DNA of 64,000 nucleotides from positions 248,001-312,000 of IMG/VR virus record IMGVR_UViG_3300037882_003354; one strand, given 5' to 3'. Within the stretch, counting starts at the first letter, position 1. Every line of letters starts with the position of its first letter. Positions 5,221 through 40,425 of the stretch are shown here, one piece after another. The position numbers were made by a program, and so were the translations under genes. The notes beneath the pieces are model-generated. The model made no database searches. It worked only from the letters and a program-made list of their open reading frames with translations, and was not told the DNA's origin.

Positions 5221-5248
5221 GGTGTCTCCTTGTTAGTTGCTATGCACT

Positions 5249-5277
5249 ATTATACACTGATTTATCGGAGTAGTCAA
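5249..5277 (-). promoter_or_regulatory. sigma70-type promoter
   Basis: TTGACT-17 nt-TATAAT on the minus strand. Confidence 0.8.
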
Positions 5278-5305
5278 TGGAAACGGGCATCACTGCCCGT
5301 TAGGT

Positions 5306-8862: not shown

Positions 8863-9477
8863 TTACTTGACTTTTTTATAACTTACCTTGCGTCCTTCTA
8901 CTCCATACTCAATCACCTCAAAATTATTTTTAATTAAATCTTCGTGTATCAATGCATGTGGGTAATCAGCAATATCGTCAAATATAAAAATTGTACCTGT
9001 GGCAGACCTTGGGTAAAAAAATCTCAATTCCCTGAATAAGCTGACTATGTCATGTGGCCCATCAAAGAACACTAGACTGTACTGGTTTATAATTTGTTTG
9101 TAGTCTTGATAAACTGGCACCCCATCGGCGAATCTAGAAAAGAATTCGGTATCCTCTAGGCAAAAGAATACAACATTCACTGGCTTTCCTTGCGCGAAGT
9201 TGTATATACCTGGCAAGGCTTCGTCGCGCATGTGGTTGCTATAACCACATTTCCGCAATTCGCCCTCTCTAGGTGCATAATCAATATCGCCATACGGGTC
9301 AATGCATACGACGTTTCTATTAATATCACCGGCGCTCAGTAGCCCATTAATGATATGGGATAGACTGCCACCTTTCCTAGTGCCGATTTCACATACAATT
9401 CCTTGCACGTCTTTGATTGCTGCGGCGGCATTATACAATACATGATAATCTCCGCTGTCTGTTGGTAGTGTTTCCAT
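8863..9477 (-). CDS. Class I SAM-dependent methyltransferase (Methyltransf_24/TylF-like)
   Basis: VCEIGTRKGGS, CIDPYG, LVFFDGPHD, FIFDD. Confidence 0.75.
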   Translation of the reverse strand: METLPTDSGDYHVLYNAAAAIKDVQGIVCEIGTRKGGSLSHIINGLLSAGDINRNVVCIDPYGDIDYAPREGELRKCGYSNHMRDEALPGIYNFAQGKPVNVVFFCLEDTEFFSRFADGVPVYQDYKQIINQYSLVFFDGPHDIVSLFRELRFFYPRSATGTIFIFDDIADYPHALIHEDLIKNNFEVIEYGVEGRKVSYKKVK

Positions 9478-9842: not shown

Positions 9843-10075
9843 GATCGTTCCTTTAATAATTGTAATAGATGTTCATGACTGTCCCTCCAACGCACTTCAG
9901 ACTTTCGACCAGCATCCGAGTTGGGAGATATAGCAAGCCCACGATATCCGTATTTCCAAAAAATAATTTTGTTGGTTATCTCACAACGGTGGGGTAGCCA
10001 GGCAAAGGACAATTGCCACGTGGCTCTGGAATAAAATGGGTCGTATGTTTGATAGTTTTCTGTGTAAAACATCAT
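9839..10075 (-). CDS. Hypothetical protein
   Basis: Start re-picked to ATG at 10075 (ATGA overlap with the queE stop). Confidence 0.55.
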   Translation of the reverse strand: MMFYTENYQTYDPFYSRATWQLSFAWLPHRCEITNKIIFWKYGYRGLAISPNSDAGRKSEVRWRDSHEHLLQLLKERS

Positions 10076-10923
10076 GTGCCCCATGCGTTGCGGAACAAAG
10101 GCACCTGCAATCGATCACTATATCGCAGTCCATGCTGCATGGCCAATTCGGCCACACGACGATTGTTCAGTGTGTATACACTTTCCACACCACCCACGGG
10201 CATGAGATAGATGGGTCCACGAAATCCAGCAGCACGATATTCAGCCGAGGCTTCCAAGGCATCAGCTACATCTGTTTCAGTGGCCACCACAAACTTCAGG
10301 TATGCATAACCCACCTGTTCATATTCGCAGACAACTTCCGGACGAATGGCATCCTCCCAGTTTTCACCACTGCATGGCAGTTTGGCACTGACTGAGAATG
10401 TGACCTCACCACCAGCGCCGTGTGGAAACTGCGCCTGATTCCAGGCTTGCAAGTACTCTTTAAATTCCTTGGTCAATCGCTGAGTGCCGTTGGTCTCAAA
10501 AGTAATCTCTTTTAGATTCTTCATCTTGGCATGCGCCAGCAAGTCAGGATAGGCCCGTTGCCAACCCAGCAAGGGCTCACCGCCTGTGATCACCAGGTGC
10601 TCATCACGCCATTCGCCGAACGGTAAAATTTCCATGATGCGGTCGGCGATGGCATCAGTGGTCAGCATGGGACTCAGATGTTTGAACTCCGGCATCCAGG
10701 AGGCGAAGGAGTCGCATCCTGACTTGACCAAGGGCAGGTCGTTGTATGTTTTATAATCTGCGATCTTGATCGCATGACGCTCTTGACTGGCTTCACCTGG
10801 CAGCATGCCAAATCCGTCACAGGTAAAATTACAACCAAATGTTCTCAAGAACACGGAGGGAACGCCCATATAACGTCCCTCTCCCTGGATTGAATAGAAT
10901 AATTCGCTTACTTTAATCTTCAT
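10072..10923 (-). CDS. queE: 7-carboxy-7-deazaguanine synthase (radical SAM QueE)
   Basis: KVSELFYSIQGEG, VFLRTFGCNFTC...GCDS, VITGGEPLL, ETNGT, VSAKL, YSDRLQV. Confidence 0.9.
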   Translation of the reverse strand: MKIKVSELFYSIQGEGRYMGVPSVFLRTFGCNFTCDGFGMLPGEASQERHAIKIADYKTYNDLPLVKSGCDSFASWMPEFKHLSPMLTTDAIADRIMEILPFGEWRDEHLVITGGEPLLGWQRAYPDLLAHAKMKNLKEITFETNGTQRLTKEFKEYLQAWNQAQFPHGAGGEVTFSVSAKLPCSGENWEDAIRPEVVCEYEQVGYAYLKFVVATETDVADALEASAEYRAAGFRGPIYLMPVGGVESVYTLNNRRVAELAMQHGLRYSDRLQVPLFRNAWGT

Positions 10924-11248
10924 GTTTTAATCCGTCCATAATGACTTTACGTTCTCTATTGTACACTTCTCTATTTAGAAAAGCAAGAAACTCTTCGTAC
11001 TCCATGTGCTCTGCATGCTTTAGCAGATTCTTGCAGGCCAGGTAGTAGTATCTGCGACGAGCAGACTTGGTGACACCCTTGGCACTCTCCACGGTGATCT
11101 GGAATGTACGTACCAACACGTCAGCGGCCTCGCTGGGTTTGCCATGCCATTCAACATCACCGTCATTGGTAATAACTAACACTGGTTCGCTTTGAGCGTT
11201 GTTGAATGTAAATGCAGAAGTATGGATATTGGTATAGGTTGGAGTCAT
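10913..11248 (-). CDS. Hypothetical protein
   Basis: Start re-picked to MTPTY at 11248; the longer version overlaps the HIT gene. Confidence 0.6.
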   Translation of the reverse strand: MTPTYTNIHTSAFTFNNAQSEPVLVITNDGDVEWHGKPSEAADVLVRTFQITVESAKGVTKSARRRYYYLACKNLLKHAEHMEYEEFLAFLNREVYNRERKVIMDGLKHED

Positions 11249-11276
11249 GGTGCCAACCCAGTTGCCCTGTACATGA

Positions 11277-11672
11277 TTACAGTTTTTTATATTGTGGTGA
11301 TCGATAGTTGCCTTGGCCCGGTATCGTATTACGCACGCCGCCCACCGGATCCGAGACATCGCCTGTTCTACGTGGGATAAGATGTATATGGGGCCAACTA
11401 ACAGTTTGACCAGCAGCCTGGCCTTGATTAATTCCCACGTTAAATGCATGCCATTCTCCTGATTCCACTTGTTGTTTGCCATATCTGACTGCATCTTCAA
11501 ATGCATTGGTCAAGATTGCCATGGTGTTATATTTAGGTACAAATAATAGATGCCCAGGAGTCACTGGGTATCGATCTCGATACACGGCCACATGAAAATC
11601 TTCCCGTACTAGGTCGTCCCAGGGTGCATCGCTATCGGACAGATGTTCAGGACCATCAAAAACTTTAATCAT
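11277..11672 (-). CDS. HIT family nucleotide hydrolase
   Basis: YPVTPGHLLFVPK, GQAAGQTV, HIHLIPRR. Confidence 0.9.
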   Translation of the reverse strand: MIKVFDGPEHLSDSDAPWDDLVREDFHVAVYRDRYPVTPGHLLFVPKYNTMAILTNAFEDAVRYGKQQVESGEWHAFNVGINQGQAAGQTVSWPHIHLIPRRTGDVSDPVGGVRNTIPGQGNYRSPQYKKL

Positions 11673-12406
11673 ACAATTTCCTCTAAGGTTGGTGAATAGT
11701 TGCCACGATGTTGCACCGTGATGCTGGCCACACGAGTGGCAAATTTAATGGCACCGGTGATGTCGTGACCATTTTCCAGGTACTTGTAGGTCAGCGCAGA
11801 CAGGAAGGTGTCCCCTGCACCGCATACATCACTGACTTCTACCAGGGGTGCAGGATACGTTTCATTCTGGTATCGAGCACCTGATGCACCCAGGGTGACG
11901 ATCAGGTCATCACAATGGGATGTTGCCTGGTTGAACTCCTGATTATTAATTTTGACAAATGCTCCACTGAATCTGGCAAGATCCGTCTTCTTGGTATCAA
12001 TGAACACTGGTCCAGGGAAGTTGTGAATCACGTGTTCTATATGTTGGTAAGACAGGAAACCCTTGTTGTAGTCGGAAATCACCACAGCATCGTAATATTC
12101 CCAGGGCTTGCTCACAGAGCCTTTCCAGGCGTCAATGTTGCCCTCGTCATCCACACGCAACAGATGTTGGCCCGATCGATCATCAATGTATCTGGTCTTG
12201 GTGATGATGGTTTGGTTGCTGATGAATGTGACATCACAATCCAAATTCAGCAGGTTTTCAAGTACATTGGCTGCCATGCCCGGCACTGTGTAGTATTCTC
12301 GGATTTTCATCACAGGAACTGGTGCTTCTGGACTCAAACGATCGCATGACCCAATGTAGTATTCGTCAGTGCACTGATCCCCCAGGAGTAAAATTTTAAA
12401 TGACAT
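11669..12406 (-). CDS. PfkB-family sugar kinase, HldE/RfaE kinase-domain-like (heptose-7-phosphate kinase)
   Basis: RLSPEAPVPV, GMAANV, SDYNKG, DVCGAGDTF. Confidence 0.85.
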   Translation of the reverse strand: MSFKILLLGDQCTDEYYIGSCDRLSPEAPVPVMKIREYYTVPGMAANVLENLLNLDCDVTFISNQTIITKTRYIDDRSGQHLLRVDDEGNIDAWKGSVSKPWEYYDAVVISDYNKGFLSYQHIEHVIHNFPGPVFIDTKKTDLARFSGAFVKINNQEFNQATSHCDDLIVTLGASGARYQNETYPAPLVEVSDVCGAGDTFLSALTYKYLENGHDITGAIKFATRVASITVQHRGNYSPTLEEIV

Positions 12407-12412
12407 GATGCC

Positions 12413-12913
12413 TCACTTGGTCCACCAATTTTCCCAGGTGTATTCAATCCAGACGTCGTCTTCCATCTTGTTGATTTCCATGCCAGCGTAATACACGCCC
12501 ACCTGGCAGTCACTGGCCAAGTTGTCAACAACAGTGGCAAATCTAACATTTTCATTCCAGACTTTTTCCCAGCGATCACAATCGTTGGGGTGACAAAGAG
12601 TGGGCCAGTCTTTCATGATCCAGTTGAGAGTGGCACCGGTATCGTTGATGTCGTCGACGACTAGTATTCGTTTGCCATCGTATGCATCCTCGGCCATGCC
12701 ACAGTCACTGACGGTGTCACCGCCATCCCGTAGACTGACGTTCAACGCCTTCATGGGCACACCCAGATAGTGGCTGATCATCACAGCGGGCAGCAGTCCG
12801 CCACGAGTGATACCCACCACATAATCGGGCCGCCACTCAGACACCACAATTTGCCTGCAAATATTGGATATCAGCGACTGAAATTTTACATGATCAATAA
12901 TGAGTTTTTTCAT
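12413..12913 (-). CDS. Purine phosphoribosyltransferase (Gpt/Hpt-like)
   Basis: VVGITRGGLLPA; PRPP loop ILVVDDINDTGAT. Confidence 0.85.
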   Translation of the reverse strand: MKKLIIDHVKFQSLISNICRQIVVSEWRPDYVVGITRGGLLPAVMISHYLGVPMKALNVSLRDGGDTVSDCGMAEDAYDGKRILVVDDINDTGATLNWIMKDWPTLCHPNDCDRWEKVWNENVRFATVVDNLASDCQVGVYYAGMEINKMEDDVWIEYTWENWWTK

Positions 12914-13245
12914 GATCGCTTGAGTGACTCCATGGTGATAATTTTATCCAGCTCTCGGCCAAAATCTTGATCACTGGTGATGACATACAGCCCAGTGGTA
13001 TTTCGATCGTGGTTATGATCGTAACGCTGCGTTTCCACGATCCTGCCACCAGTGGCCTGAAATACATGAAAACGCAGAGCACGTTCACGCTCCAGTGTAA
13101 TACTACCCGCTTCACTATCACGTGGAGGGCTACTCAGATACTTTGACTGTGACCTTTTGTTTGAGACTGAGATTATGTCTCGACGTTCGTCAGCATCGTA
13201 TGCTGATCGGCACTTGCGATTGAGCCAATTAAAAAACCAGTTCAT
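12910..13245 (-). CDS. Hypothetical protein
   Basis: 111-aa ORF in the operon. Confidence 0.7.
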   Translation of the reverse strand: MNWFFNWLNRKCRSAYDADERRDIISVSNKRSQSKYLSSPPRDSEAGSITLERERALRFHVFQATGGRIVETQRYDHNHDRNTTGLYVITSDQDFGRELDKIITMESLKRS

Positions 13246-13247
13246 GT

Positions 13248-14330
13248 TTATTCCTTTACAATATTATCGATCATAACACCGGCATTGAGATACTGTTCAA
13301 TTAGAATTTTACGCTGTTTGTCCAACGCATGCAAGTATTTTTCACGATTGTGAATACGCTCGCTGATAAACTCCACAACATCTGCGCGATGCAGTTCATA
13401 TGCTGCCACACTCTCGGTCCAGGCACTGGGATACTTGAATTCCGGCAGATACATTTCAGCATAACTGCATCGATCTGGCAACACGGGAATAACTCCAGCC
13501 AGCACACCTTCCATGATGCTGATGCCCAGATTTTCATGCAACGCACAACTGAAAATAATCTTGCTCCGACTCAACATCTGGTAATACTCGTCTTTGCTGA
13601 GATTCAACTTCTGCGTGATGACCATTCGGGACACCTGACACAGGTCAAATACCTGAGCTAGATCCTCAGCAATGTCAGGTTGCTTGTCGGCATTATACCT
13701 GTGCGGCCACATGACCAAATTGTCCGGATCTTTCTGCACATGGGCATATTGCGTCATAGCATCTACAATCATGCCATGCGGTTGTCCACTGCGCACAGCA
13801 CGATACTGTTCGCCAATGTCAATTTTTAGATTACGGAGGAACATGTCCTTGTGAAAGTCAGTGGCATAGTAATTGTACTTGCAACTATGGAACCAACTGC
13901 TCTCTGCCTGCCAGGGCCAGGGTTTTTGCATTTTGTATCCCAGGATGTCTGTGGGATCGTATGCTCCAGCATGCCAGATGGCATGTAGTTCCCAATCTTG
14001 TCCCATCAAGTCTCGCATGTATGCAATTTGCGTGATACACGGATTCCAAGCATCAGTAAACAGGATTTTGTCATTAGTGGTGACATTACCTGCATCCAAC
14101 TGGGTTATAAAGTTGCACAATTGAGTGCTTTTCCAAAAGTTTGTATCGGAAAAATTTAAAAATGCACCTGCTGTGACTTGCGTGGTACGTTGAACGCCAT
14201 CCAGCTGAATTACGGTAAACTTGTCGCCTGCTGCCTGAGCGAGTACTTGAGGAATGTTCTGATGCCATTGCATGGTATATCTGGAATCCAAGGGCTCCAG
14301 TGCAAAGATCCAAATGTTGGGTTTGTTCAT
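13248..14330 (-). CDS. GT-B glycosyltransferase, GTDC1/QTMAN (DUF3524)-like
   Basis: WPHRYNADKQPD, SKDEYYQML, SCALHENLGISIMEG, PVLPDRCSYAEM; GT-B E-x7-E sugar-nucleotide motif. Confidence 0.75.
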   Translation of the reverse strand: MNKPNIWIFALEPLDSRYTMQWHQNIPQVLAQAAGDKFTVIQLDGVQRTTQVTAGAFLNFSDTNFWKSTQLCNFITQLDAGNVTTNDKILFTDAWNPCITQIAYMRDLMGQDWELHAIWHAGAYDPTDILGYKMQKPWPWQAESSWFHSCKYNYYATDFHKDMFLRNLKIDIGEQYRAVRSGQPHGMIVDAMTQYAHVQKDPDNLVMWPHRYNADKQPDIAEDLAQVFDLCQVSRMVITQKLNLSKDEYYQMLSRSKIIFSCALHENLGISIMEGVLAGVIPVLPDRCSYAEMYLPEFKYPSAWTESVAAYELHRADVVEFISERIHNREKYLHALDKQRKILIEQYLNAGVMIDNIVKE

Positions 14331-14337
14331 TTATTTG

Positions 14338-14344
14338 ATAAATA
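14338..14344 (+). promoter_or_regulatory. T4-type late promoter core ATAAATA
   Basis: Lies 5 nt before the ATG at 14350 of a lone + strand gene. Confidence 0.55.
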
Positions 14345-14349
14345 TTTAC

Positions 14350-14601
14350 ATGCGTATCAAAGAATTACTTGCCGAAAAAACCATTGCAGCACCCACTGCC
14401 AGTCAGTGTCAGGTCAAACGGCTGAGTAATGTTCGTTATTCTCAATGTGTGGCACGTGGGCTCAAAGCTCATGACAGTGAGCACACTGATGGCACTGGTA
14501 CACAAGGTGTTAAAGGCAGTGGCCGGCATCTTCGTGGACGCAAAGTCAAGAGCACCAAGTACGGTGGTAGTTTAAAATACTATCCGGGCAGTCGGGAATA
14601 A
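14350..14601 (+). CDS. Small basic protein with capsid-targeting-like leader
   Basis: Start re-picked to MRIKELLAE; lone counter-oriented gene behind an ATAAATA box. Confidence 0.65.
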   Translation: MRIKELLAEKTIAAPTASQCQVKRLSNVRYSQCVARGLKAHDSEHTDGTGTQGVKGSGRHLRGRKVKSTKYGGSLKYYPGSRE

Positions 14602-14604
14602 GAT

Positions 14605-14844
14605 TCAAAAATCGCTCGACTGTTGTGCCGATTGAGCAGCCCGCTGCTCCCTGCGTGCCTTGCGCTCGTGGTATTCTTGAGCACGTTGAAAATCCCGATA
14701 TGCATCGGACTTGTACATGTCCTTGGGTTCAAATGGCAGTAGATTGAACCTGCAGTGATCCAGCCAATTTTCCAGATCATCAAAGATCTTGGAAACTTCA
14801 GGCTTCATCTTGAGGGTCTTCTGAATGTAGTGTGGCAGTGCCAT
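14605..14844 (-). CDS. Hypothetical protein
   Basis: Start re-picked to MALPHY at 14844. Confidence 0.6.
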   Translation of the reverse strand: MALPHYIQKTLKMKPEVSKIFDDLENWLDHCRFNLLPFEPKDMYKSDAYRDFQRAQEYHERKARREQRAAQSAQQSSDF

Positions 14845-14860
14845 GATTTTATTACCTTGA

Positions 14861-15325
14861 TTAAATTGTGATAGATTGAATTGGGCGAGAAGTGTTATAT
14901 CTAACGATGCATCCGTTCTCACCATCCTCGGACACCTCGATTTCTACCTCACGACGTGGATAGCGTGTGGCAATTTGCTCATAAAGATCGTCTGCGATCA
15001 TCTCGCAACTTTTATGATCCAATGACAATACTGCTTGGGAGTTTGAGTACAAATCTTCCAGCCAGCGTTTAAATTGAATAAATTCAATTTCCCGGTCATC
15101 ATGAAATACTTCAATAGCCACCCGGAAGTGAAAAATATGTCGATGCGGGGTTGCCAGGAATGACACATCATATCGGTCACCAGTGGCCAGTGCAGGATCT
15201 GTGGCAGCCGCTGGGTAGCAATGGATGCCTTCCTTGGCAAAAGTCACCCAAATTTTACGATTTGCCGAATTTCGAATTCGATTTCGTTGTTCTTGTAGCG
15301 CCAGGTTATGTTGTTCTTCAATCAT
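14861..15325 (-). CDS. QueD-like T-fold protein (QueD or DpdL-type)
   Basis: EGIHCYP, PHRHIFHFRV (HxH metal site), KSCEMIADDL, VSEDGENG. Confidence 0.7.
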   Translation of the reverse strand: MIEEQHNLALQEQRNRIRNSANRKIWVTFAKEGIHCYPAAATDPALATGDRYDVSFLATPHRHIFHFRVAIEVFHDDREIEFIQFKRWLEDLYSNSQAVLSLDHKSCEMIADDLYEQIATRYPRREVEIEVSEDGENGCIVRYNTSRPIQSITI

Positions 15326-15352
15326 ATGTTAAACGTAGGTTAGTAAGTAATT

Positions 15353-15381
15353 AGTATACAGGAAAACAGGTGATCAGTCAA
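15353..15381 (-). promoter_or_regulatory. sigma70-type promoter
   Basis: TTGACT-17 nt-TATACT on the minus strand. Confidence 0.75.
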
Positions 15382-15402
15382 GTTACTCCTGATCACCATG
15401 GT

Positions 15403-17040
15403 TCATTCGTCCAGGCTGTCTTCAAGACCCCTGAGTTTGTCGTCATCACGATTGGCAAAATCAATCTCATCTTGCGAAGTGTGTTCGAAATCAAACAAGT
15501 TGTTGAATGTGGTTGGCACTGGGCCAGTGGACCATGAACCGGCCAGATCGCACAAGAACGAATCTGCTTGTTCAATCATGTCAAATGCTTCCTGCTTGGT
15601 CTTGGTTTCAAAAAGTTCTGCAACAAACCGATTGAAATACAAAATATTACGTGGAACCCACACGCTGTATTCGTCCATGTTGGACTCTTTGGCGTTCAAC
15701 TTCCTCCAATGACGCCAATCGGGCAATTCGCGAGCGCATTCCATGTCCATGAGATGGTTTGCACGTTGTATTGCGGCAATATGTGAATAGACATTGTGTC
15801 CCATCATGAGTGCATATGCAAAACTATCCCAGGAAGTTCTGTTGGGAATCTTGTCCAGCTTGTTAAGCCGAGGGACAACCTTATAATGTTTTTTATTCAA
15901 GTGATCAAACTTTACCTGATTGTCCTGGTCATCTTTGCCCAGTTCCTTGTCTGTCTTGCGTACACCCAGGTCGTAATAACAGATGTCGCCCATGGTCAAC
16001 CGTCGACCGATTTCGCTTTCGAATGGGAATGGAATGTCGCTTCCTGCAAGTGCCTTGTTGTCAGGGGCTTTTTCCATAATAACACTCCAACGCTTTGCTG
16101 TATGTTGCGAGTTGGTGTAGACGAGTCCATATGCCGTGGCGACAAATGGGGATGCGCAGTCAAAAGAGATGGTAACGTCTTCATTAATGTGTTTCCTGAT
16201 TTGTCGTTGAATAGCAGTTAAGTAGCAGGCCCAATCCATCTGGGCAGTGCCCAGGAAGTGGATCCAGTTTTTGCCCTTGAGCAAACCATCTTCTCTCAGG
16301 GTCATCAAACGCTTGAGTGTGATGTCCATGTCACTCTTGGTACCGCTGCCAAATGCCCAGCCGTCAGCAGCACGATCACCCCATACCGCAGGATCACTAT
16401 ACTCCTTGACTCCGTTGTACCATTTTTCAGTCAGTTCCCAATCATCACCCTGCAAGACATTGAGTAACTTGGTCTTGCCCAGGCGGTTCTTGAGGAAATA
16501 CTCGTTGTTGAATCTGGTCTTTTCCAGACAGTCTTCAAACGTCTTCAATCCAGTCTTGGGACCGTGAGTTTCATCGCAAGCCCAGGTGGGAACGTCCAAC
16601 ATCATGGACCAATCTGCAGTTTCTTCCAACCAATACAAGATGTCATCTCGCATTTTATTGGCAGCCGCACCTTCAAAGTCTCTGAAGTCAAATTTAAGCA
16701 CACCCTTGCCGATCTGGAATCCACCGGAGTCACCCAGGATCAGCGTGTTGTTGCGATCTCGTTGTTGCACCATGGACTCCTGTGTGTAACTCTTCTTGAG
16801 ATCCAGTTGTGCGTGACCTGCCGAATACAGACCGTATTTGTAGGAAAAATATCCTTGTTCAGGATTCAGGAAGTTTAGTCCTTCAACTCCGCGATCAAAG
16901 CCGGCTGGCATGCGTGATGCAGGAACAAAATCTTCCAGGCGTTGTTTTGCTATGTAAGTTCCATAGAAGCCACTGATGGCCGGCAGGAAAATAGCGTAGT
17001 CTTTTTGCGACTCTGTTAGATTGATTGGTGGATTACTCAT
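15403..17040 (-). CDS. dpdA: TGT-fold transglycosylase, DpdA-like (7-deazaguanine insertion)
   Basis: Ordered TGT motifs GDSGGFQ, MMLDVP, NVLQG, GWAFG, HFLG, FDCASP, GHN. Confidence 0.8.
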   Translation of the reverse strand: MSNPPINLTESQKDYAIFLPAISGFYGTYIAKQRLEDFVPASRMPAGFDRGVEGLNFLNPEQGYFSYKYGLYSAGHAQLDLKKSYTQESMVQQRDRNNTLILGDSGGFQIGKGVLKFDFRDFEGAAANKMRDDILYWLEETADWSMMLDVPTWACDETHGPKTGLKTFEDCLEKTRFNNEYFLKNRLGKTKLLNVLQGDDWELTEKWYNGVKEYSDPAVWGDRAADGWAFGSGTKSDMDITLKRLMTLREDGLLKGKNWIHFLGTAQMDWACYLTAIQRQIRKHINEDVTISFDCASPFVATAYGLVYTNSQHTAKRWSVIMEKAPDNKALAGSDIPFPFESEIGRRLTMGDICYYDLGVRKTDKELGKDDQDNQVKFDHLNKKHYKVVPRLNKLDKIPNRTSWDSFAYALMMGHNVYSHIAAIQRANHLMDMECARELPDWRHWRKLNAKESNMDEYSVWVPRNILYFNRFVAELFETKTKQEAFDMIEQADSFLCDLAGSWSTGPVPTTFNNLFDFEHTSQDEIDFANRDDDKLRGLEDSLDE

Positions 17041-17050
17041 GTTTTATCGA

Positions 17051-17785
17051 TTAAGCCTGTGCTGGGATGATGTACTTGTAGACTGCCAGTCCGCTGTCCA
17101 GTGTAATTTGCATGGCGCCTTCGTTGCTGAAACTCATCTTGGCATTATTGGCATCTGCAATTTTTAGAATGGCCAGAATGCTGGACACTGGCCAAGTCCA
17201 GGTCTTGTTGACCTTGCCAGTGACACCAGTGGCAAATACAAACTCACCACCATGTGAACTCACATCACCGAATGTAAAGATCAACTTGTCGCCATCTGTC
17301 TTGGCCAGGAATGTGGTGTGCTCAGTATTGGCACCAGCCTGGAATTGGAATCGCTGGATGGCAGCAACTGTGGGCTCAACTTCCACATCCCACTTGACGC
17401 CGCGAAACTTCACAGTCTTGAGCTTTTCGTTGATAATGTCCTGGTTCATGAAGCGATAGTCGTTCTTGAAGTCTCCATCTTTATTTTCAAAGTGCAGCCC
17501 CACCGGAATGGTATCGCCATTACGATCAGCCATGGTAACTTCAATCTTGGCATCCTCTTGATATTCCTTGCCGTCCAGCAAATAACGCAGTTTGTCCAAC
17601 TGCGGCATGCCAAACGTGCCAATCATGTCGGGATAGGGATTGGTTGTTTCACTGTACATGATTACCGATCGATCATCGGCCATGGAATCCACCAGCGTCT
17701 TGTCCTCTGTGCCTGTAATTTTTACAATGTTCAAGAACCCCAGTTTATTTGTATGTGCCACGATGTCTTGTAAGATGTCTTTCAT
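17051..17785 (-). CDS. Probable DNA polymerase sliding clamp (gp45/PCNA-like)
   Basis: 244 aa, alternating beta/alpha pattern, C-terminal YKYIIPAQ, immediately downstream of polB. Confidence 0.55.
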   Translation of the reverse strand: MKDILQDIVAHTNKLGFLNIVKITGTEDKTLVDSMADDRSVIMYSETTNPYPDMIGTFGMPQLDKLRYLLDGKEYQEDAKIEVTMADRNGDTIPVGLHFENKDGDFKNDYRFMNQDIINEKLKTVKFRGVKWDVEVEPTVAAIQRFQFQAGANTEHTTFLAKTDGDKLIFTFGDVSSHGGEFVFATGVTGKVNKTWTWPVSSILAILKIADANNAKMSFSNEGAMQITLDSGLAVYKYIIPAQA

Positions 17786-17845: not shown

Positions 17846-20515
17846 TCAATCGAATGAGAATAGTTTGCCAAATGTATTTGTTTCTGTGGTACTATTTAGG
17901 TCCCAATCCAAGACACCAATTAAATTGTCGATCTTGTTGTTGATGATCACAGCCTCCATCTCAGCATGATCAAATGGCAGTTCCTGGAACCATTTGGGTA
18001 ATCTCAATTCATCCACAGGATATGCAATGGATGTGTAGCCCAGGGGATTTGCTTTGACCTTGCACACAATGACCTTCATGCCGTCCACGATGTTGGTGCT
18101 GTACTTGTCTCCATTCATGCGCTTGAGCGTGTTCCAATTGATGCTGGCTCTCACATGTCCTGGCATGTTGGCCCGGCCGGCCTTGAGTTCATCGGCCTGG
18201 TACTTGGCGATGTTGTTGGCTCGCTTGGGACTGCCCTTCTCCCAACCAGGACGCGACTTGAACTCAGTGCGGAATTCGCAGATGCGAGCCAGCACTTCCT
18301 TCTCCTGCCCACCATTCAGCACCGTGGTCAGGATCTCCTCCAGGAACTTTTGCATGAACTCAGGTGTATCACTACGCCTGAGATCCAGTCCCATGGCCTT
18401 GATCTTGCCCGGCCGGCCTTCAATATCACTACGCTTGCCATCCTTGTCATAGTACAGCACAGCATAACGCTTCTTGGTAATGAACAGCCCCTTGATGGCC
18501 ACAATTTCACGACCAGCCTTGATGACTTCTCCACGACTCTTGGGACAATGGAATGCATCCAACATCAACTGCGGAAAGGTGCTGTTGACCTCTTGAGCAA
18601 TGGTGTCATACAGTTGCACCACTGTGTCCTTGTCCCAGCGAATTTGACCCTTGTTAATTTCAGTCTTCAACGAACTGTATGCACTAAAGTAGGCACTATC
18701 AGTGTCACCGTAGATGATGGATTTGCCCATGTGATCATATTCTCCAGTGATCACCTCGTTGATCTTGCCGGCCATGTGCCGGGCAATGGCGCGTCCTGTG
18801 AGTGTGGTGCTCTGTCCAATGCGTTTGTCGAAGAACCTACAACCGGAATTTAAGATGGCGCCGTACAGACTGTTCAAGTTAATCTTCTTGACCAGTTGTC
18901 GTTTGTCCCAGTACTCTTCCTCGATCTTGTTCTCGGCCAGTATGGCATCTTTGAGTTTGGCCTGCATTTCTTTTCTCTCGGAATACCAACGCTTGAGCAG
19001 ACCAGGAATGATGCCTTCACGCTCGTATGTGAAGATGGTGCCATTGGCTGACAACATCCAGGGCTTGTTGCTCTCATAGATCAATTCGTAAATTTGAGCA
19101 CCGCTCATGACATCAGTTTCGCCATTTTCCCAGTCCACGATGATGTCATGGCTACGATCCTGACTCATGACATATTCGTACTCGTCACTGCCAAACTTGC
19201 CTTCCCAGGCTCCTGAGAAAGTTGCGCCCTTGGCCATCTTGGCGTCAATGTCTGCCCGGGTATAATCCTGCCGCAGTTGCCCCACGATGGTTTCTGGTCC
19301 CATGTTCAGTGCACGAATCACTGATGGATACAGACTGTTGATGTCCATGCTGCCAATCCAGTCATGCAAGCCCTTCTTGGGATATGCCACGTATGCACCG
19401 GCTGCCTGTGACCCTTCATCGTCGTCCTTCTTGGGACGGCTGGGCACGATCAATCCTCTATGATGTGCTTCGTTGACAATGGCCTGCTCAGTGACTGCCA
19501 CTGCGCCCATGGTGGTTTGCAGCAGCACGGTATTTTCGTGTGCCACAGTATTGGCCAGATCCAGGAATTTAAGTTTCTTGTCCAGTTTGTCCAAGAGTGC
19601 ACAGTCCTGACGATTGTATTCAATAAACTTTTTAAAGTCATTGTTATACAACTGATCCAGGGTGCCTTCATAGACTGTTTTAGTCTCGCCCAGTTCGTAT
19701 TCAGCAATGGCATCCAGTCGATAACTGTGTCGTTCTTCGTAGGTGTACTTGCGGTACAGTTCCAGGCTGTCCAGGTGCACTCGGCCCACTAGATCATAAG
19801 TGCTTGCTGCCTTGCCGTATTTTTCGTATTCTCGCTTCTTGGGGAAATGATTCCACAGACAAAATCTGCGAGTGTCCTCTTTGCTCAGGGCCTTGGTCAC
19901 ACGGTTCACGGTGTAGGGAATATCGAAACCCTCGCTGTTCCAACCACTCAGCACATCGGCATCTTCAATAAGATTCAGAAAGGCATCCAGCATTTCGGCT
20001 TCTGTGTCAAACAGAATGGTATTGGGAAATTCTTTCACCATGTCCCTGGCCTGCTCTATGGTCAAGGTTTTGGGAGGTATTGCCAGGCACACCAGAGTGT
20101 CCATCCATTGCAGATGTACTGCAATGGCAGTGATGGGCATGAATGCATCTTCTGGACTGGCATAGCCGCGTTCAGGATCAAAGTCTACCTCAATGTCGAA
20201 CCAGGCCACGTTGAGTCGGGGACCATCTCGCCCCAGGTAATTCTCTTCCAGGCATCTGAACACTGGATTCATATCGCTCTCATACAAGCGATGATCACTG
20301 TGCACTCGTTGTTCTTTGGTGTGTTCCTTGAAGCTACGTGAAGTCACCTTGCTTAGGTTTTCACCATGTATGCTCTTGTACTTGCCACGAGCATCGGGAT
20401 AATAGAACATGTACTTGGCAGGATAATCTTGATAGATTCTGCCTTTTTTCGGGTCTCGCTCCACGACATGGATGATATCCTTGTCGCGATCCCATACTGA
20501 ATCCACATATGACAT
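17846..20515 (-). CDS. polB: Family B DNA polymerase with 3'-5' exonuclease
   Basis: Exo FDIEV, GWNSEGFDIPY, YNRQD; pol DINSLYPS, KINLNSLYG, YGDTDS, KKRYAV. Confidence 0.97.
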   Translation of the reverse strand: MSYVDSVWDRDKDIIHVVERDPKKGRIYQDYPAKYMFYYPDARGKYKSIHGENLSKVTSRSFKEHTKEQRVHSDHRLYESDMNPVFRCLEENYLGRDGPRLNVAWFDIEVDFDPERGYASPEDAFMPITAIAVHLQWMDTLVCLAIPPKTLTIEQARDMVKEFPNTILFDTEAEMLDAFLNLIEDADVLSGWNSEGFDIPYTVNRVTKALSKEDTRRFCLWNHFPKKREYEKYGKAASTYDLVGRVHLDSLELYRKYTYEERHSYRLDAIAEYELGETKTVYEGTLDQLYNNDFKKFIEYNRQDCALLDKLDKKLKFLDLANTVAHENTVLLQTTMGAVAVTEQAIVNEAHHRGLIVPSRPKKDDDEGSQAAGAYVAYPKKGLHDWIGSMDINSLYPSVIRALNMGPETIVGQLRQDYTRADIDAKMAKGATFSGAWEGKFGSDEYEYVMSQDRSHDIIVDWENGETDVMSGAQIYELIYESNKPWMLSANGTIFTYEREGIIPGLLKRWYSERKEMQAKLKDAILAENKIEEEYWDKRQLVKKINLNSLYGAILNSGCRFFDKRIGQSTTLTGRAIARHMAGKINEVITGEYDHMGKSIIYGDTDSAYFSAYSSLKTEINKGQIRWDKDTVVQLYDTIAQEVNSTFPQLMLDAFHCPKSRGEVIKAGREIVAIKGLFITKKRYAVLYYDKDGKRSDIEGRPGKIKAMGLDLRRSDTPEFMQKFLEEILTTVLNGGQEKEVLARICEFRTEFKSRPGWEKGSPKRANNIAKYQADELKAGRANMPGHVRASINWNTLKRMNGDKYSTNIVDGMKVIVCKVKANPLGYTSIAYPVDELRLPKWFQELPFDHAEMEAVIINNKIDNLIGVLDWDLNSTTETNTFGKLFSFD

Positions 20516-23935: not shown

Positions 23936-24373
23936 TTATACTTTTGAACTGGCTTTTAGGAACCAGGCATGCTTTTTATGTGAGTCCATGCGTTCTGCAA
24001 GAAAATTTGAAAGTCCATGTGCACCAGCAACCTCAGCAGCATCATAATTTTTCTTTAATACTATCTGTATACGCTCGCTGTCTTGCAACAGTTCTTGGAT
24101 CATGTCTTCCTTGCTGGGCACGCGATCTTCATCTTCAATGCGGGTCAACATGCTGAGATTGTGGTAACTGGTGGGCATGTAACCCCCCAGTTTACGTACA
24201 TTTTCTGCATAGGGGTCAATGGCACCGTAAACTTCAGTGTAGATTTCTTCAAACAATTTATGGTATTCGTAAAAGTCTGACCCCTCTATGTTCCAGTGCA
24301 TGGAATGCACCTTGACATAAAAACTAAAAGTGGTGGCAAAACCTATACGAGTCAGTTGAATTAATTTATCCAT
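23936..24373 (-). CDS. dps: Dps / ferritin-like protein
   Basis: HSMHWNIEGSDFYEYHKLFEEIY, DPYAENVRKLG, HKKHAWFL. Confidence 0.9.
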   Translation of the reverse strand: MDKLIQLTRIGFATTFSFYVKVHSMHWNIEGSDFYEYHKLFEEIYTEVYGAIDPYAENVRKLGGYMPTSYHNLSMLTRIEDEDRVPSKEDMIQELLQDSERIQIVLKKNYDAAEVAGAHGLSNFLAERMDSHKKHAWFLKASSKV

Positions 24374-39775: not shown

Positions 39776-39965
39776 GTTTGAACTCCATGTGAGGTAGGAT
39801 GCAGTTGTCGAAAATTTGTGCCATGTTATTGTAGATGTGCTCTCTTTCTGAGTGCGTGGTCCCACATGCCATGACATTGCAACCAAAACCCACTGCCCTT
39901 TCTAGGCCGTAGTCGTGTCTGTAAGTATAGCACATGGACAGAATGATGTCTTCACGAGTTTTCAT
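39759..39965 (-). CDS. Small hypothetical protein
   Basis: Start re-picked to MKTRED. Confidence 0.55.
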   Translation of the reverse strand: MKTREDIILSMCYTYRHDYGLERAVGFGCNVMACGTTHSEREHIYNNMAQIFDNCILPHMEFKHDTHS

Positions 39966-40425
39966 GTTTGGATCGTTCTGCCGCTGCCACTCTTTTACGC
40001 AGGCTGCTGCTGGAGAAGCTATGGTCTCTTCCATTGAAGACAATTTCTATGCCACGTTTCTTACAGATATCTTTGCCTGTAAATTCCTGATCAGCGTATT
40101 CCACACCTAATACTCTAACATCAACTGGTAAAATTAGCAATAGATCTTCAAGATCTTTTTCAGTCTGATAGACCACCACTTCGTCCACATTACGATTGGT
40201 GGCCAACTGAATTTGTCGCTCCACTATGCTCTGTATGGGAGCATTTTTAGTTGTGGGCCTGTCTATGGTGGGGTCTGTTTGTAGCGCAGCAATCAGGTAA
40301 TCGCAGTGGTTTCTCGCTTCGGCCAGCATGGCTATGTGACCAGAGTGAAAAAGATCAAATGCAGAAAACACGATGCCAATTTTAAACCCTTCTTGTTTGA
40401 GTTGTTTGACCTTGTTGAATATCAC
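39952..40425 (-). CDS. HxGH nucleotidyltransferase (TagD / RfaE domain II-like)
   Basis: SAFDLFHSGH, VDEVVVY, GVEY, FSSSSLR. Confidence 0.88.
   Translation of the reverse strand: MIFNKVKQLKQEGFKIGIVFSAFDLFHSGHIAMLAEARNHCDYLIAALQTDPTIDRPTTKNAPIQSIVERQIQLATNRNVDEVVVYQTEKDLEDLLLILPVDVRVLGVEYADQEFTGKDICKKRGIEIVFNGRDHSFSSSSLRKRVAAAERSKHENS

What the first reader, a model, noticed from the sequence alone, without database searches (positions are those of the whole stretch)
10072..17040. 7-deazaguanine modification cluster with a QTMAN/GTDC1-like glycosyltransferase: candidate glycosylated deazaguanine in phage DNA
Seen: QueE, a PRTase, a GT-B glycosyltransferase, a QueD-like protein and a TGT-fold protein lie in one minus-strand run directly downstream of polB and the clamp. 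The GT carries WPHRYNADKQPD...SKDEYYQML...SCALHENLGISIMEG...PVLPDRCSYAEM. From memory this parallels the GTDC1/DUF3524 pattern WPHRWEHDKDPE...SKDDYFQVL...STAKHEFFGVAMLEA...PLCPKDLVYPEI. Established: DpdA transglycosylases insert 7-deazaguanines (preQ0, preQ1, ADG, G+, CDG and others) into phage DNA, and GTDC1 is QTMAN, which mannosylates queuosine, a 7-deazaguanine, in tRNA. Inference: this GT adds a sugar to a DpdA-inserted deazaguanine. I know of no characterised glycosyl-deazaguanine in DNA. FolE and QueC were not seen in this window.
Basis: partly seen in the sequence, partly recalled or inferred. Interest (0 to 1): 0.88.

Follow-up and report, generated by a model that had tools for sequence, protein, structure and literature searches.

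The report
Sugar-adding enzyme inside phage deazaguanine cluster
A giant uncultured phage carries genes for replacing guanine in its DNA with a 7-deazaguanine base. Wired into that gene set, here and in at least six other phage lineages, is a sugar-transferring enzyme related to the one that puts mannose on queuosine in tRNA, which points to a sugar-bearing deazaguanine in DNA that nobody has yet described.

Summary
The gene run is real but needs corrections. The "QueD-like" gene is DpdL, the proposed 7-carboxy-7-deazaguanine decarboxylase; it carries the LxxxHRHxF signature. The 545-aa protein keeps the catalytic motifs of tRNA-guanine transglycosylases, so it is DpdA-like.

The glycosyltransferase (GT) has a GT4 GT-B fold. 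Its C-terminal (donor) domain is specifically QTMAN/GTDC1-like: hhalign 99.4% against verified bacterial QTMAN_N proteins, versus 0.5% against a control GT4. Its N-terminal (acceptor) domain does not match Pfam QTMAN_N.

Homologues of the GT lie within about 3 kb of DpdL in six isolate-phage lineages: PA5oct-like, Phosso, ACP17, X1/BUDD, BCSR5 and BUCT-ZZ01. DpdA-like genes were seen in the clusters I read (PA5oct, ACP17, X1, BUCT-ZZ01); Phosso's lies elsewhere in its genome. In 56 of 80 related metagenomic loci, mannose-type and other sugar-nucleotide genes are interleaved with DpdA, DpdL and the GT.

The best reading is a glycosylated 7-deazaguanine derivative in phage DNA. The attachment site is unknown, because this pathway makes no queuosine-like side chain. 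No such base turned up in the literature library. FolE and QueD are absent from the window. Nothing here is chemically proven; the finding is new and directly testable on cultured phages.

The parts
15403..17040 (-). DpdA-like DNA-guanine transglycosylase: a 545-aa member of the TGT superfamily, in a subfamily of its own
   Evidence: Motifs DSGGFQ (104-109), LDV, LQG, HFLG and SFDC (292-295) align with the catalytic motifs of E. coli Tgt and with ACP17, X1 and BUCT DpdA3-type proteins. D104 and D294 are invariant in 26 homologues. The top Foldseek hit is TGT 3hfy, at E 0.013, probability 0.99, on a model of pLDDT 58. It is 43% identical to PA5oct gp0316, which sits beside the PA5oct GT. It has no Pfam hit.
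14861..15325 (-). DpdL, a QueD-like T-fold protein proposed to decarboxylate 7-carboxy-7-deazaguanine. The true start is probably about 22 codons downstream of the ORF start.
   Evidence: It carries LATPHRHIF, which fits the DpdL signature LxxxHRHxF (PMC10516641 section 16). It is 57% identical to the ACP17 homologue and 32% to phiST CGPG_00067. PHROG 17812 matches at 6.8e-35.
14605..14925 (-). 106-aa ORF of unknown function between DpdL and the GT
   Evidence: No family hit. Present in 10 of 54 related loci.
13248..14330 (-). Glycosyltransferase with a GT4 GT-B fold, a QTMAN/GTDC1-like C-terminal domain and a divergent N-terminal domain
   Evidence: R211, K216 and the EX7E pair E266/E274 are invariant in the family.
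12910..13245 (-). 111-aa ORF of unknown function, specific to this lineage
   Evidence: No family hit. Present in 2 of 54 related loci.
12413..12913 (-). Xanthine/guanine-type phosphoribosyltransferase
   Evidence: Pfam Pribosyltran 1.9e-13; NCBIfam XPRT 5.4e-10, below cut-off. PRPP-binding motif VVDDINDTG. Present in 33 of 54 related loci. Homologues lie in the deazaguanine clusters of other phages.
11669..12406 (-). PfkB-family sugar kinase, closest to heptose-7-phosphate 1-kinase (HldE domain I); specific to this lineage
   Evidence: NCBIfam rfaE_dom_I 4.4e-40, below cut-off; Pfam PfkB 1.3e-15. It is 40-47% identical to cyanophage kinases that sit beside a heptose-1-P adenylyltransferase and GmhA. 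Found in only 1 of 54 related loci.
11277..11672 (-). HIT-domain protein (nucleotide hydrolase or transferase family). Its start overlaps the PfkB stop codon by 4 nt.
   Evidence: Pfam HIT 3.6e-10, 40.8 bits against a cut-off of 21.5. PHIHLIP motif.
10913..11506 (-). 197-aa ORF of unknown function. It overlaps the HIT ORF, so the real gene is probably shorter.
   Evidence: No family hit. Present in 2 of 54 related loci.
10072..10923 (-). QueE-like radical-SAM 7-carboxy-7-deazaguanine synthase
   Evidence: PHROG 2076 5.7e-51, matched over its whole length. NCBIfam QueE models reach 2.6e-14 and weaker, all below cut-off. It is 45% identical to BUCT-ZZ01 QueE.
17051..17785 (-). 244-aa protein conserved next to polB (context). 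It may be a sliding clamp.
   Evidence: 34% identical to the Phosso protein annotated as a sliding clamp and 36% to PA5oct gp0314, annotated as a structural protein. No Pfam hit.
17846..20515 (-). Family-B-type DNA polymerase (context)
   Evidence: 50-52% identical to annotated DNA polymerases of PA5oct and Phosso.
39952..40425 (-). Cytidylyltransferase-like nucleotidyltransferase, a possible partner of the PfkB kinase for making an NDP-sugar donor
   Evidence: Pfam CTP_transf_like 3.3e-9. It is 60% identical to the nucleotidyltransferase found inside the deazaguanine clusters of relatives.

Best explanation
The run encodes a DpdL-type 7-deazaguanine DNA-modification pathway with a glycosylation step built into it.

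Inferred from the family assignments:
- QueE makes 7-carboxy-7-deazaguanine (CDG). The upstream FolE and QueD steps are encoded elsewhere in the 322-kb genome or supplied by the host.
- DpdL converts CDG to a 7-deazaguanine-type base.
- The 545-aa TGT-superfamily protein exchanges guanine in phage DNA for that base.

Inferred from the conserved gene linkage:
- The QTMAN-related retaining GT4 enzyme transfers a hexose or heptose, probably manno-configured, from an NDP-sugar onto the deazaguanine-derived base.
- This most likely happens after the base is in DNA, less likely on the free base before insertion.
- The result would be a glycosylated deazaguanine that shields the DNA from restriction.

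In this phage the donor sugar may be supplied by the lineage-specific PfkB heptose-kinase-like enzyme, together with the HIT protein and/or the cytidylyltransferase-like enzyme at 39952-40425. The PRTase most likely recycles the guanine released by base exchange into GMP, which feeds the pathway again.

The atom that receives the sugar is not known.
For: 1. Enzyme identities.

2. The catalytic residues of the GT (R211, K216, E266, E274) and of the DpdA-like protein (D104, D294) are invariant across their families.

3. The genes overlap or abut: GT/p111 leave a 2-nt gap, and p111/PRT and PfkB/HIT overlap by 4 nt. They are probably co-expressed.

4. The GT lies within about 3 kb of DpdL in six isolate-phage lineages as well as in this clade. 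The DpdA-type genes seen in those clusters belong to two different subfamilies.

5. In complete related loci, 52 of 54 carry DpdL and 52 of 54 carry the DpdA-like gene alongside the GT.

6. In 56 of 80 related loci, sugar-nucleotide genes are interleaved between DpdA/DpdL/GT and FolE/QueE. They are a nucleotidyltransferase fused to a mannose-6-P-isomerase cupin, a phosphomannomutase, a UDP-Glc/GDP-Man dehydrogenase, an epimerase/dehydratase, a DegT aminotransferase and a second GT4.

7. The GT's donor domain is specifically related to the QTMAN family. That family's one characterised activity is mannosylation of a 7-deazaguanine nucleoside within a nucleic acid.

8. PA5oct carries the same DpdA-GT-DpdL trio. 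Its virion DNA resists several G-containing restriction sites and is sensed by nucleases that target hypermodified DNA, but the modification has not been identified (PMC12191111).
Against: - 7-deazaguanine and CDG lack the hydroxylated side chain that QTMAN glycosylates, and no gene that would build one was found. An O-glycoside is not obvious. The alternatives (N2, O6, a carboxyl ester, C7) have no precedent for a GT4 enzyme acting on DNA.
- The GT's N-terminal acceptor domain does not match QTMAN_N.
- The family is acidic (pI about 5.6), which gives no hint of DNA binding.
- DpdL occurs without the GT in about seven other lineages. One is phiST, whose DNA holds plain dDG, so the GT is not needed to make or insert the base.
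- DpdL's decarboxylase activity has never been reconstituted (PMC10516641).
- The DpdA-like assignment rests on motifs and a weak fold match. Profile comparison to DpdA3 proteins was not significant.
Confidence: 0.45

Rival explanations
1. The GT glycosylates the free 7-deazaguanine base or a nucleotide of it, not DNA. Huimycin's GT4 enzyme HuiG does something similar when it N-glycosylates the 2-amino group of a preQ0-derived base. The product would be either a small molecule or a precursor that the divergent DpdA then inserts. The PRTase would turn the base into a nucleotide, as in tubercidin biosynthesis.
For: The top structural neighbours of the GT all use small-molecule acceptors: BshA, MshA, SenB, sucrose-phosphate synthase, GlgM. 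A GT4-family enzyme that glycosylates a deazapurine base is known, as is a CDG-PRTase-decarboxylase route without QueC (bioRxiv 10.64898/2026.04.15.718813). The PRTase recurs in phage deazaguanine clusters. The GT family is acidic.
Against: A TGT-type pocket is tight around N2 and N9 of the base, so a glycosylated base would fit poorly. A secreted or free deazapurine glycoside has no obvious use for a lytic phage. The cluster lies among replication genes, as DNA-modification modules do. PA5oct virion DNA itself is modified.
Confidence: 0.2
2. The GT is a true QTMAN-like tRNA enzyme. It glycosylates queuosine-34 (or another deazaguanine) in host or phage tRNA to tune translation, and it merely shares a neighbourhood with the DNA-modification genes.
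For: The C-domain relationship to the QTMAN family is specific. Bacterial hosts carry Q34 tRNAs. The bacterial QTMAN-like genes stand alone, as housekeeping tRNA-modification genes usually do.
Against: The acceptor-side QTMAN_N domain is not detected in the window GT or in six phage homologues. The tight linkage to DpdL across lineages goes unexplained. Interleaved, variable sugar cassettes with aminotransferases, dehydrogenases and a second GT fit arms-race diversification of a DNA decoration better than a tRNA mark.
Confidence: 0.1
3. The GT and the sugar genes serve something unrelated, such as glycosylating a virion protein, a cell-envelope component or another DNA base. They sit by the deazaguanine genes only because this stretch downstream of polB is a hot spot for accessory genes.
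For: The region is variable in content among relatives. More distant GT homologues in PhiXhv-type Xanthomonas phages sit with GlmS and a deacetylase and have no DpdL. DpdL works without the GT in phiST.
Against: Adjacency to DpdL holds in six isolate lineages with otherwise different genome layouts, including T4-like phages and jumbo phages. No hydroxymethyl-pyrimidine pathway was seen: ThyA sits beside DHFR, as a true thymidylate synthase would. Chance predicts about 0.01 co-occurrences where 18 are observed.
Confidence: 0.1

Closest known systems
QTMAN / GTDC1 (tRNA-queuosine alpha-mannosyltransferase; Pfam QTMAN_N PF12038 plus Glycos_transf_1) and its bacterial homologues
   Same: Both have a GT4 GT-B fold. 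The C-terminal domains align at hhalign 99.4%, E 5e-22. They share the motif W-P/N-H-R-x-x-x-D-K and the region around EX7E. Both are linked to a 7-deazaguanine base in a nucleic acid.
   Different: Pfam does not recognise the N-terminal domain, and the HENQ and FNS-type motifs of the bacterial family are not conserved. The gene is encoded by phages inside a DNA-modification cluster. The pathway makes no queuosine, so the acceptor group must differ. The donor sugar is unknown.
Phage DpdL/DpdA3 pathway that gives 2'-deoxy-7-deazaguanosine (dDG), as in Cellulophaga phage phiST (Cui, Hutinet et al., NAR 2023, PMC10516641)
   Same: Both have QueE, DpdL with the LxxxHRHxF signature and a TGT-superfamily transglycosylase, and both lack QueC. 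A related PRTase also occurs in phiST-like phages.
   Different: phiST has no GT homologue. The transglycosylase here is a 545-aa subfamily only about 17% identical to DpdA3-type proteins. FolE and QueD are not in the window. Sugar-activation genes are attached.
Post-replicative glycosylation of phage DNA bases, for example T4 alpha- and beta-glucosyltransferases on 5-hydroxymethylcytosine and the varied glycans on 5hmC and 5-hydroxycytosine (bioRxiv 10.1101/2023.12.21.572611; PMC13326640)
   Same: The logic is the same: a base-modification core plus GTs, with sugar-nucleotide cassettes that vary between related phages.
   Different: Those systems act on hydroxylated pyrimidines. This would be a purine analogue with no known hydroxyl handle. 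The GT family also differs: the T4 enzymes are not among the top structural matches.
Huimycin and dapiramicin tailoring (the GT4-type enzyme HuiG) and tubercidin biosynthesis (a CDG-specific PRTase plus a decarboxylase)
   Same: A GT4-family enzyme decorates a 7-deazaguanine-type base. The tubercidin route is also QueC-less and combines CDG, a PRTase and a decarboxylation.
   Different: Those are bacterial secondary-metabolite pathways acting on free bases and nucleotides. No sequence relationship to them was tested here. The UbiD decarboxylase, GMP reductase and methyltransferase of those pathways are absent.

Membership tests
QTMAN / GTDC1 family (Pfam PF12038 QTMAN_N + GT4 C-domain) | N-terminal QTMAN_N (formerly DUF3524) domain | tested here: not met
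   Pfam gives no hit, even at E<=10, for the window GT. It gives none at E<=1 for six phage homologues. All 28 bacterial controls hit it, at E as low as 1.5e-64. N-domain-only hhalign gives 21% probability, E 1e-3, over 135 collinear columns, against 1% or less for a control GT4. The signal is weak and does not establish membership.
QTMAN / GTDC1 family (Pfam PF12038 QTMAN_N + GT4 C-domain) | C-terminal domain with the family motif W-[NP]-H-R-W-E-[HY]-D-K and the EX7E region | tested here: met
   The window GT has WPHRYNADK and HENLGISIME. C-domain hhalign is 99.4%, E 4.9e-22, against 0.5% for a control GT4. The QTMAN-like profile scores the phage GTs at 62-65 bits, while the best solved GT4 scores 41 bits.
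QTMAN / GTDC1 family (Pfam PF12038 QTMAN_N + GT4 C-domain) | Acceptor is queuosine-34 of tRNA and donor is GDP-mannose | not testable with these tools
   Context only. No QueC, QueF, QueA or QueG was found in the window. Mannose-pathway genes (a PMI-cupin plus nucleotidyltransferase fusion, and PMM) lie next to the GT in relatives.
GT4 retaining GT-B glycosyltransferases | Two Rossmann-like domains (GT-B fold) and an EX7E motif in the C-domain | tested here: met
   The model has pLDDT 91. Foldseek matches BshA, MshA, SenB and glycogen synthase at E 1e-9 to 1e-8. E266 and E274 are invariant. The Pfam Glycos_transf_1 match is weak (E 0.0035, below cut-off).
DpdA / tRNA-guanine transglycosylase superfamily | TIM-barrel with the DSGGFQ substrate-binding Asp and the FDC nucleophile Asp | tested here: met
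   LGDSGGFQ (102-109) and SFDC (292-295) align with E. coli Tgt and with DpdA3-type proteins. Both Asp residues are invariant in 26 homologues.
DpdA / tRNA-guanine transglycosylase superfamily | Statistically significant sequence or fold match to TGT (PF01702) or to DpdA3 | tested here: inconclusive
   No Pfam hit. BLAST to ACP17 DpdA3 gives E 0.001 over 219 residues. hhalign to single DpdA3 sequences is not significant. Foldseek puts TGT on top, but at E 0.013 and on a model of pLDDT 58.
DpdL (proposed CDG decarboxylase) | QueD-like T-fold in which CxxxHGH is replaced by LxxxHRHxF, with homology to phiST CGPG_00067 | tested here: met
   LATPHRHIF is present. tblastn finds phiST CGPG_00067 at 32% identity and the ACP17 homologue at 57%.
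DpdL (proposed CDG decarboxylase) | Occurs with DpdA, FolE, QueD and QueE but without QueC | tested here: inconclusive
   DpdA-like and QueE are present, and no QueC was found. FolE and QueD are missing from the 64-kb window. Among related loci, 73 of 80 have FolE and 22 of 80 have QueD.
QueE (7-carboxy-7-deazaguanine synthase) | Match to a curated QueE model above its cut-off | tested here: not met
   The NCBIfam QueE equivalogs score 53 bits or less against cut-offs of at least 200. The full-length PHROG QueE-like match (5.7e-51) and 45% identity to the annotated BUCT-ZZ01 QueE support a divergent QueE.
Tubercidin-type nucleotide route (CDG PRTase + UbiD decarboxylase + GMP reductase + phosphatase) | PRTase together with a UbiD-family decarboxylase and a GMP reductase | tested here: not met
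   Only the PRTase is present. No UbiD or GMP-reductase domain appeared among the roughly 50 window ORFs scanned.

The most novel reading that the evidence does not exclude
A widespread clade of jumbo phages, and several cultured phages (PA5oct-like, Phosso, ACP17, X1/BUDD, BCSR5, BUCT-ZZ01), carry in their DNA a glycosylated 7-deazaguanine. This would be the first sugar-bearing purine analogue in any genome. It would be made by a QTMAN-related transferase that evolved a new acceptor domain. The sugar, manno-hexose, heptose, amino or uronic derivatives, or a disaccharide, would vary between lineages through swapped sugar-nucleotide cassettes.
Probability: 0.4. Interest if true: 0.9.

Novelty: new variant of a known kind. 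Interest (0 to 1): 0.8.

Why it matters
Every known 7-deazaguanine in DNA (preQ0, preQ1, ADG, G+, CDG, DG and the methyl- and formyl-preQ1 forms) is a small base, and every known DNA glycosylation is on a hydroxylated pyrimidine.

A sugar on a deazapurine would be a new class of DNA hypermodification. It would bear on restriction enzymes, CRISPR, defence by DNA glycosylases and END nucleases, and sequencing chemistry. It would also give a function to a very abundant unannotated phage protein family: about 3,900 clusters at 90% identity, none with a Pfam domain.

The finding links a vertebrate tRNA-modifying enzyme family (QTMAN/GTDC1) and its uncharacterised bacterial relatives to phage DNA biology. 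It may also explain the still unidentified G modification of PA5oct, a phage studied as a potential therapeutic agent against Pseudomonas aeruginosa.

It can be tested at once, because several cultured phages carry the module.

Tried and rejected
- Megablast of the 7.1-kb region against 50,697 phage records gave no match.
- Profile searches of the GT and the 545-aa family against PDB sequences gave no meaningful hit.
- Pfam, NCBIfam and PHROGs gave nothing for p106, p111, p197 or the 545-aa protein.
- hhalign of the 545-aa alignment against single DpdA3 sequences was not significant. The alignment has very low diversity (Neff 1.5), and the AlphaFold model was poor (pLDDT 58). The TGT assignment therefore rests on motifs plus a weak Foldseek hit.
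- I looked for a conserved neighbourhood around the bacterial QTMAN-like genes in 120 genomes, hoping for a hint at their acceptor. None was found; no neighbour family occurs in more than 5 loci.
- The isoelectric point of the GT family (about 5.6) does not separate DNA-, tRNA- and small-molecule-acting readings, because the bacterial QTMAN-like proteins are also acidic.
- I searched the window for FolE, QueD, a QueC-like PP-loop enzyme, MazG and the sugar genes of relatives by tblastn. Only the cytidylyltransferase-like gene at 39952-40425 was found.
- Four full-text literature searches for a glycosylated deazaguanine in DNA found none. The library is not exhaustive.
- I considered that ThyA (1473-2360) might be a pyrimidine hydroxymethylase providing a GT acceptor and rejected it. 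It matches thymidylate synthase over its full length at 1.8e-103 and sits next to DHFR.
- I did not use the representative-protein search or the third homologue search. The families are so large that the top hits would all have been close members.

Full report
**What is in the sequence**

The window is part of IMG/VR contig IMGVR_UViG_3300037882_003354 (322.5 kb), a jumbo phage; its GT matches locus L127 at 100%. The region has no near-identical DNA among 50,697 deposited phage genomes. On the minus strand, read in the direction of transcription, the genes are:

| Coordinates | Gene |
|---|---|
| 17846-20515 | polB, 50-52% identical to the polymerases of Pseudomonas phage PA5oct and Sinorhizobium phage Phosso |
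| 17051-17785 | 244-aa protein that Phosso annotates as a sliding clamp |
| 15403-17040 | 545-aa protein |
| 14861-15325 | 154-aa protein |
| 14605-14925 | 106-aa ORF |
| 13248-14330 | glycosyltransferase (GT) |
| 12910-13245 | 111-aa ORF |
| 12413-12913 | phosphoribosyltransferase (PRTase) |
| 11669-12406 | PfkB-family kinase |
| 11277-11672 | HIT-domain protein |
| 10913-11506 | 197-aa ORF, which overlaps the HIT ORF and is probably shorter |
| 10072-10923 | QueE |

Several neighbours overlap by 4 nt or are separated by only a few bases, so the run looks like one expression unit.

**Corrections to the observation**

- *The "QueD-like" protein is DpdL.* It carries LATPHRHIF, which fits the LxxxHRHxF signature that distinguishes DpdL from QueD's CxxxHGH (PMC10516641). 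It is 57% identical to the ACP17 homologue and 32% to phiST CGPG_00067, the founding DpdL. DpdL is the proposed decarboxylase that turns 7-carboxy-7-deazaguanine (CDG) into 7-deazaguanine. That activity has never been reconstituted.
- *The 545-aa protein is a TGT-superfamily member.* It has no Pfam, NCBIfam or PHROG hit. In an alignment with E. coli Tgt and DpdA3-type proteins it nevertheless shows the TGT barrel motifs in the right order: DSGGFQ, LDV, LQG, HFLG and SFDC. Both catalytic aspartates are invariant in 26 homologues. Its AlphaFold model is poor (pLDDT 58), but TGT is still the top Foldseek match, at E 0.013 and probability 0.99. I accept it as a divergent DpdA-like transglycosylase. 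Membership in the DpdA3 subfamily is not shown.
It is 40-47% identical to cyanophage kinases that sit beside a heptose-1-phosphate adenylyltransferase and GmhA.
- *FolE, QueD and QueC are not in the window*.

**Is the GT QTMAN/GTDC1-like?**

The GT model is confident (pLDDT 91). Its best structural matches are retaining GT4 GT-B enzymes such as BshA, MshA, SenB and glycogen synthase. No GTDC1 structure appeared among those hits, so the fold alone cannot settle the question.

Pfam's QTMAN_N model (PF12038, formerly DUF3524) does not hit the window GT or six phage homologues. To test the relationship directly, I fetched bacterial genes carrying the motif W-x-H-R-W-E-[HY]-D-K from the genome collection. 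All 28 sampled proteins hit QTMAN_N, at E as low as 1.5e-64. The comparisons then gave:

- Whole-protein profile-profile comparison of the phage GT family with these proteins: 99.2% probability, E 2.7e-19, over 262 columns.
- With the database size held equal, the phage GT profile finds 86 of 92 bacterial QTMAN-like proteins at E<1e-3 (best 5.8e-18). It finds no glycosyltransferase at all among 177,635 PDB sequences.
- In the other direction, the QTMAN-like profile scores the phage GTs at 62-65 bits. Its best solved GT4 scores 41 bits, and TarM and PimA score 22-27 bits.
- Split by domain, the C-terminal halves match at 99.4% (E 4.9e-22), while a control phage GT4 gives 0.5%.
- The N-terminal halves give only 21% (E 1e-3, 135 collinear columns), against 1% or less for the controls.

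The acceptor-binding half has diverged beyond recognition. The GT is related to the QTMAN family but is not a demonstrated member of it.

**Does the GT travel with the deazaguanine genes?**

Yes.

- Among deposited phages, GT homologues occur in 23 records and DpdL in 29. Eighteen records have both, where chance predicts about 0.01.
- These 18 records form six lineages: PA5oct-like jumbo phages, Phosso, Acidovorax phage ACP17, Xanthomonas phages X1/BUDD, Burkholderia phage BCSR5 and the T4-like cyanophage BUCT-ZZ01.
- In all six lineages the GT lies within about 3 kb of DpdL. In the five clusters I read it is one gene away or closer. A DpdA-type gene lies in the same cluster in PA5oct, ACP17, X1 and BUCT-ZZ01, and those genes come from two different DpdA subfamilies. 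Phosso's 545-aa homologue sits about 170 kb from its GT; I did not read the BUDD and BCSR5 clusters.
- The five GT records without DpdL are the most distant homologues (22% identity). They sit with GlmS and a deacetylase.
- In 54 related IMG/VR loci with at least 6 kb on both sides of the GT, 52 carry DpdL, 52 the DpdA-like gene, 36 QueE and 33 the PRTase.
- DpdL also exists without the GT in about seven lineages. One is phiST, whose DNA contains plain dDG. The GT is therefore an add-on to the pathway, not a requirement for making the base.

**Sugar genes inside the cluster**

Clustering the ORFs of the 80 related loci and scanning representatives gave the strongest new evidence. FolE follows the GT directly in 73 of 80 loci; the window is an exception. 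In 56 of 80 loci, one or more sugar-nucleotide genes are interleaved with DpdA, DpdL and the GT:

| Gene | Related loci (of 80) |
|---|---|
| Cytidylyltransferase-like domain fused to a mannose-6-phosphate-isomerase cupin | 27 |
| DegT-type aminotransferase | 15 |
| Stand-alone cytidylyltransferase-like enzyme | 13 |
| Phosphomannomutase | 12 |
| UDP-glucose/GDP-mannose dehydrogenase | 11 |
| Second, ordinary GT4 | 11 |
| Epimerase/dehydratase | 9 |

Fifteen loci also carry a Vut_1/YhhQ-type transporter, the family that imports queuosine precursors. Fourteen carry SAM synthetase.

The window's lineage has instead the heptose-kinase-like PfkB and the HIT protein. It also has a cytidylyltransferase-like gene at 39952-40425 that is 60% identical to the one inside relatives' clusters. 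A conserved base-modification core with swappable sugar cassettes is the pattern known from phages that glycosylate hydroxylated pyrimidines.

**Most likely mechanism**

The steps below are inferred, not shown.

1. QueE makes CDG.
2. DpdL turns CDG into a 7-deazaguanine-type base.
3. The DpdA-like enzyme exchanges that base for guanine in phage DNA.
4. The GT adds a probably manno-configured sugar from an NDP-sugar to the base, most likely after insertion.
5. The PRTase most plausibly salvages the released guanine into GMP, which closes a loop back to GTP and FolE.

I put 0.45 on the sugar ending up on the deazaguanine in virion DNA, and more on the weaker claim that the GT belongs to this pathway.

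The main weakness is chemical. Neither 7-deazaguanine nor CDG has the hydroxylated side chain that QTMAN uses, and no gene for building one was found. The attachment atom (N2, O6, a carboxyl ester or C7) is open.

Independent support comes from PA5oct, which has the same DpdA-GT-DpdL trio. Its DNA resists several G-containing restriction sites and is attacked by nucleases that sense hypermodified DNA, yet the modification has not been identified (PMC12191111).

**Rivals**

- The GT may act on the free base or a nucleotide. The GT4-type enzyme HuiG of huimycin biosynthesis and the CDG-PRTase-decarboxylase route of tubercidin are precedents. Confidence 0.2.
- The GT may be a true tRNA queuosine glycosyltransferase. 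Confidence 0.1.
- The GT may do something unrelated, and this stretch may simply be a hot spot for accessory genes. Confidence 0.1.

**Novelty**

Four full-text searches found no description of a glycosylated deazaguanine in DNA, and no discussion of this GT or of the PRTase in phage deazaguanine clusters. The GT family is large, about 3,900 clusters at 90% identity, many on contigs of 200-390 kb, and it has no annotation.

I rate the finding a new variant of known kinds (7-deazaguanine DNA modification and DNA glycosylation), with interest 0.8. It is unproven but directly testable on cultured phages.

Noticed in passing
window 12413-12913 (-); L005:3087-3548; L211:5947-6342; L210:5983-6468: The xanthine/guanine-type PRTase has homologues in only 24 of 50,697 phage records. 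Where I looked, they sit inside or beside 7-deazaguanine clusters: BUCT-ZZ01, PA5oct-like phages, Flavobacterium phage immuto_2-6A (between QueE and FolE, near DpdA) and Brevundimonas phage MaInes (next to FolE, a dNMP kinase and RNR). In phiST it is about 17 kb from the cluster. The 2023 DpdA paper never mentions a PRTase. It could recycle the guanine released by base exchange, or make deazaguanine nucleotides as in tubercidin biosynthesis.
   Followed up: partly
Their ORFs overlap by 4 nt. The kinase was found in only 1 of 54 complete related loci, and its nearest relatives lie in cyanophage ADP-heptose cassettes. This suggests a lineage-specific donor sugar.
   Followed up: partly
L127-L206 (related IMG/VR loci), compared with window 12413-13245: FolE directly follows the GT in 73 of 80 related loci, but it is missing from that position and from the whole 64-kb window. 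The window has p111, PRTase, PfkB, HIT and p197 there instead. QueD is also absent. These genes are either elsewhere in the 322-kb genome or supplied by the host.
   Followed up: partly
e.g. L178:5379-5987, L173:13235-14326, L177:5680-6690: Some related clusters also carry a Vut_1/YhhQ-type transporter from the queuosine-precursor uptake family (15 loci), SAM synthetase (14 loci) and a radical-SAM/SPASM protein (15 loci).
   Followed up: no
e.g. L139:8183-9172: A second, ordinary GT4 glycosyltransferase and a metallophosphoesterase sit immediately upstream of DpdL-GT in 11 related loci. This hints at a disaccharide or a further-processed sugar in that sublineage.
   Followed up: no
window 39952-40425 (-): A cytidylyltransferase-like nucleotidyltransferase lies among replication genes (a clamp-loader-like AAA protein, Cpn10). 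It is 60% identical to the one inside relatives' deazaguanine clusters.
   Followed up: partly
window 8863-9477 (-): A SAM-dependent methyltransferase (Pfam Methyltransf_24) lies just downstream of QueE. It was found in only 1 of 54 related loci. Its target is unknown.
   Followed up: no
L213:6245-7396 (Vibrio phage Bakedbeans gp176): The DpdL homology falls in the C-terminal third of an annotated 383-aa protein, so DpdL may be fused to another domain there. In Rhizobium phage RHph_I1_18, DpdL is followed by a macro-domain (Appr-1-p processing) protein instead of a GT.
   Followed up: no
They have no conserved gene neighbourhood, and the literature searched says nothing about their function.
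   Followed up: partly
window 1473-2836 (-), 3964-6385 (-), 23936-24373 (-), 44190-50309 (-): Other contents of the window: a ThyA-DHFR pair, a DUF2201 metallopeptidase/VWA protein with an AAA ATPase, a ferritin-like protein and a 2039-aa ORF.
   Followed up: no
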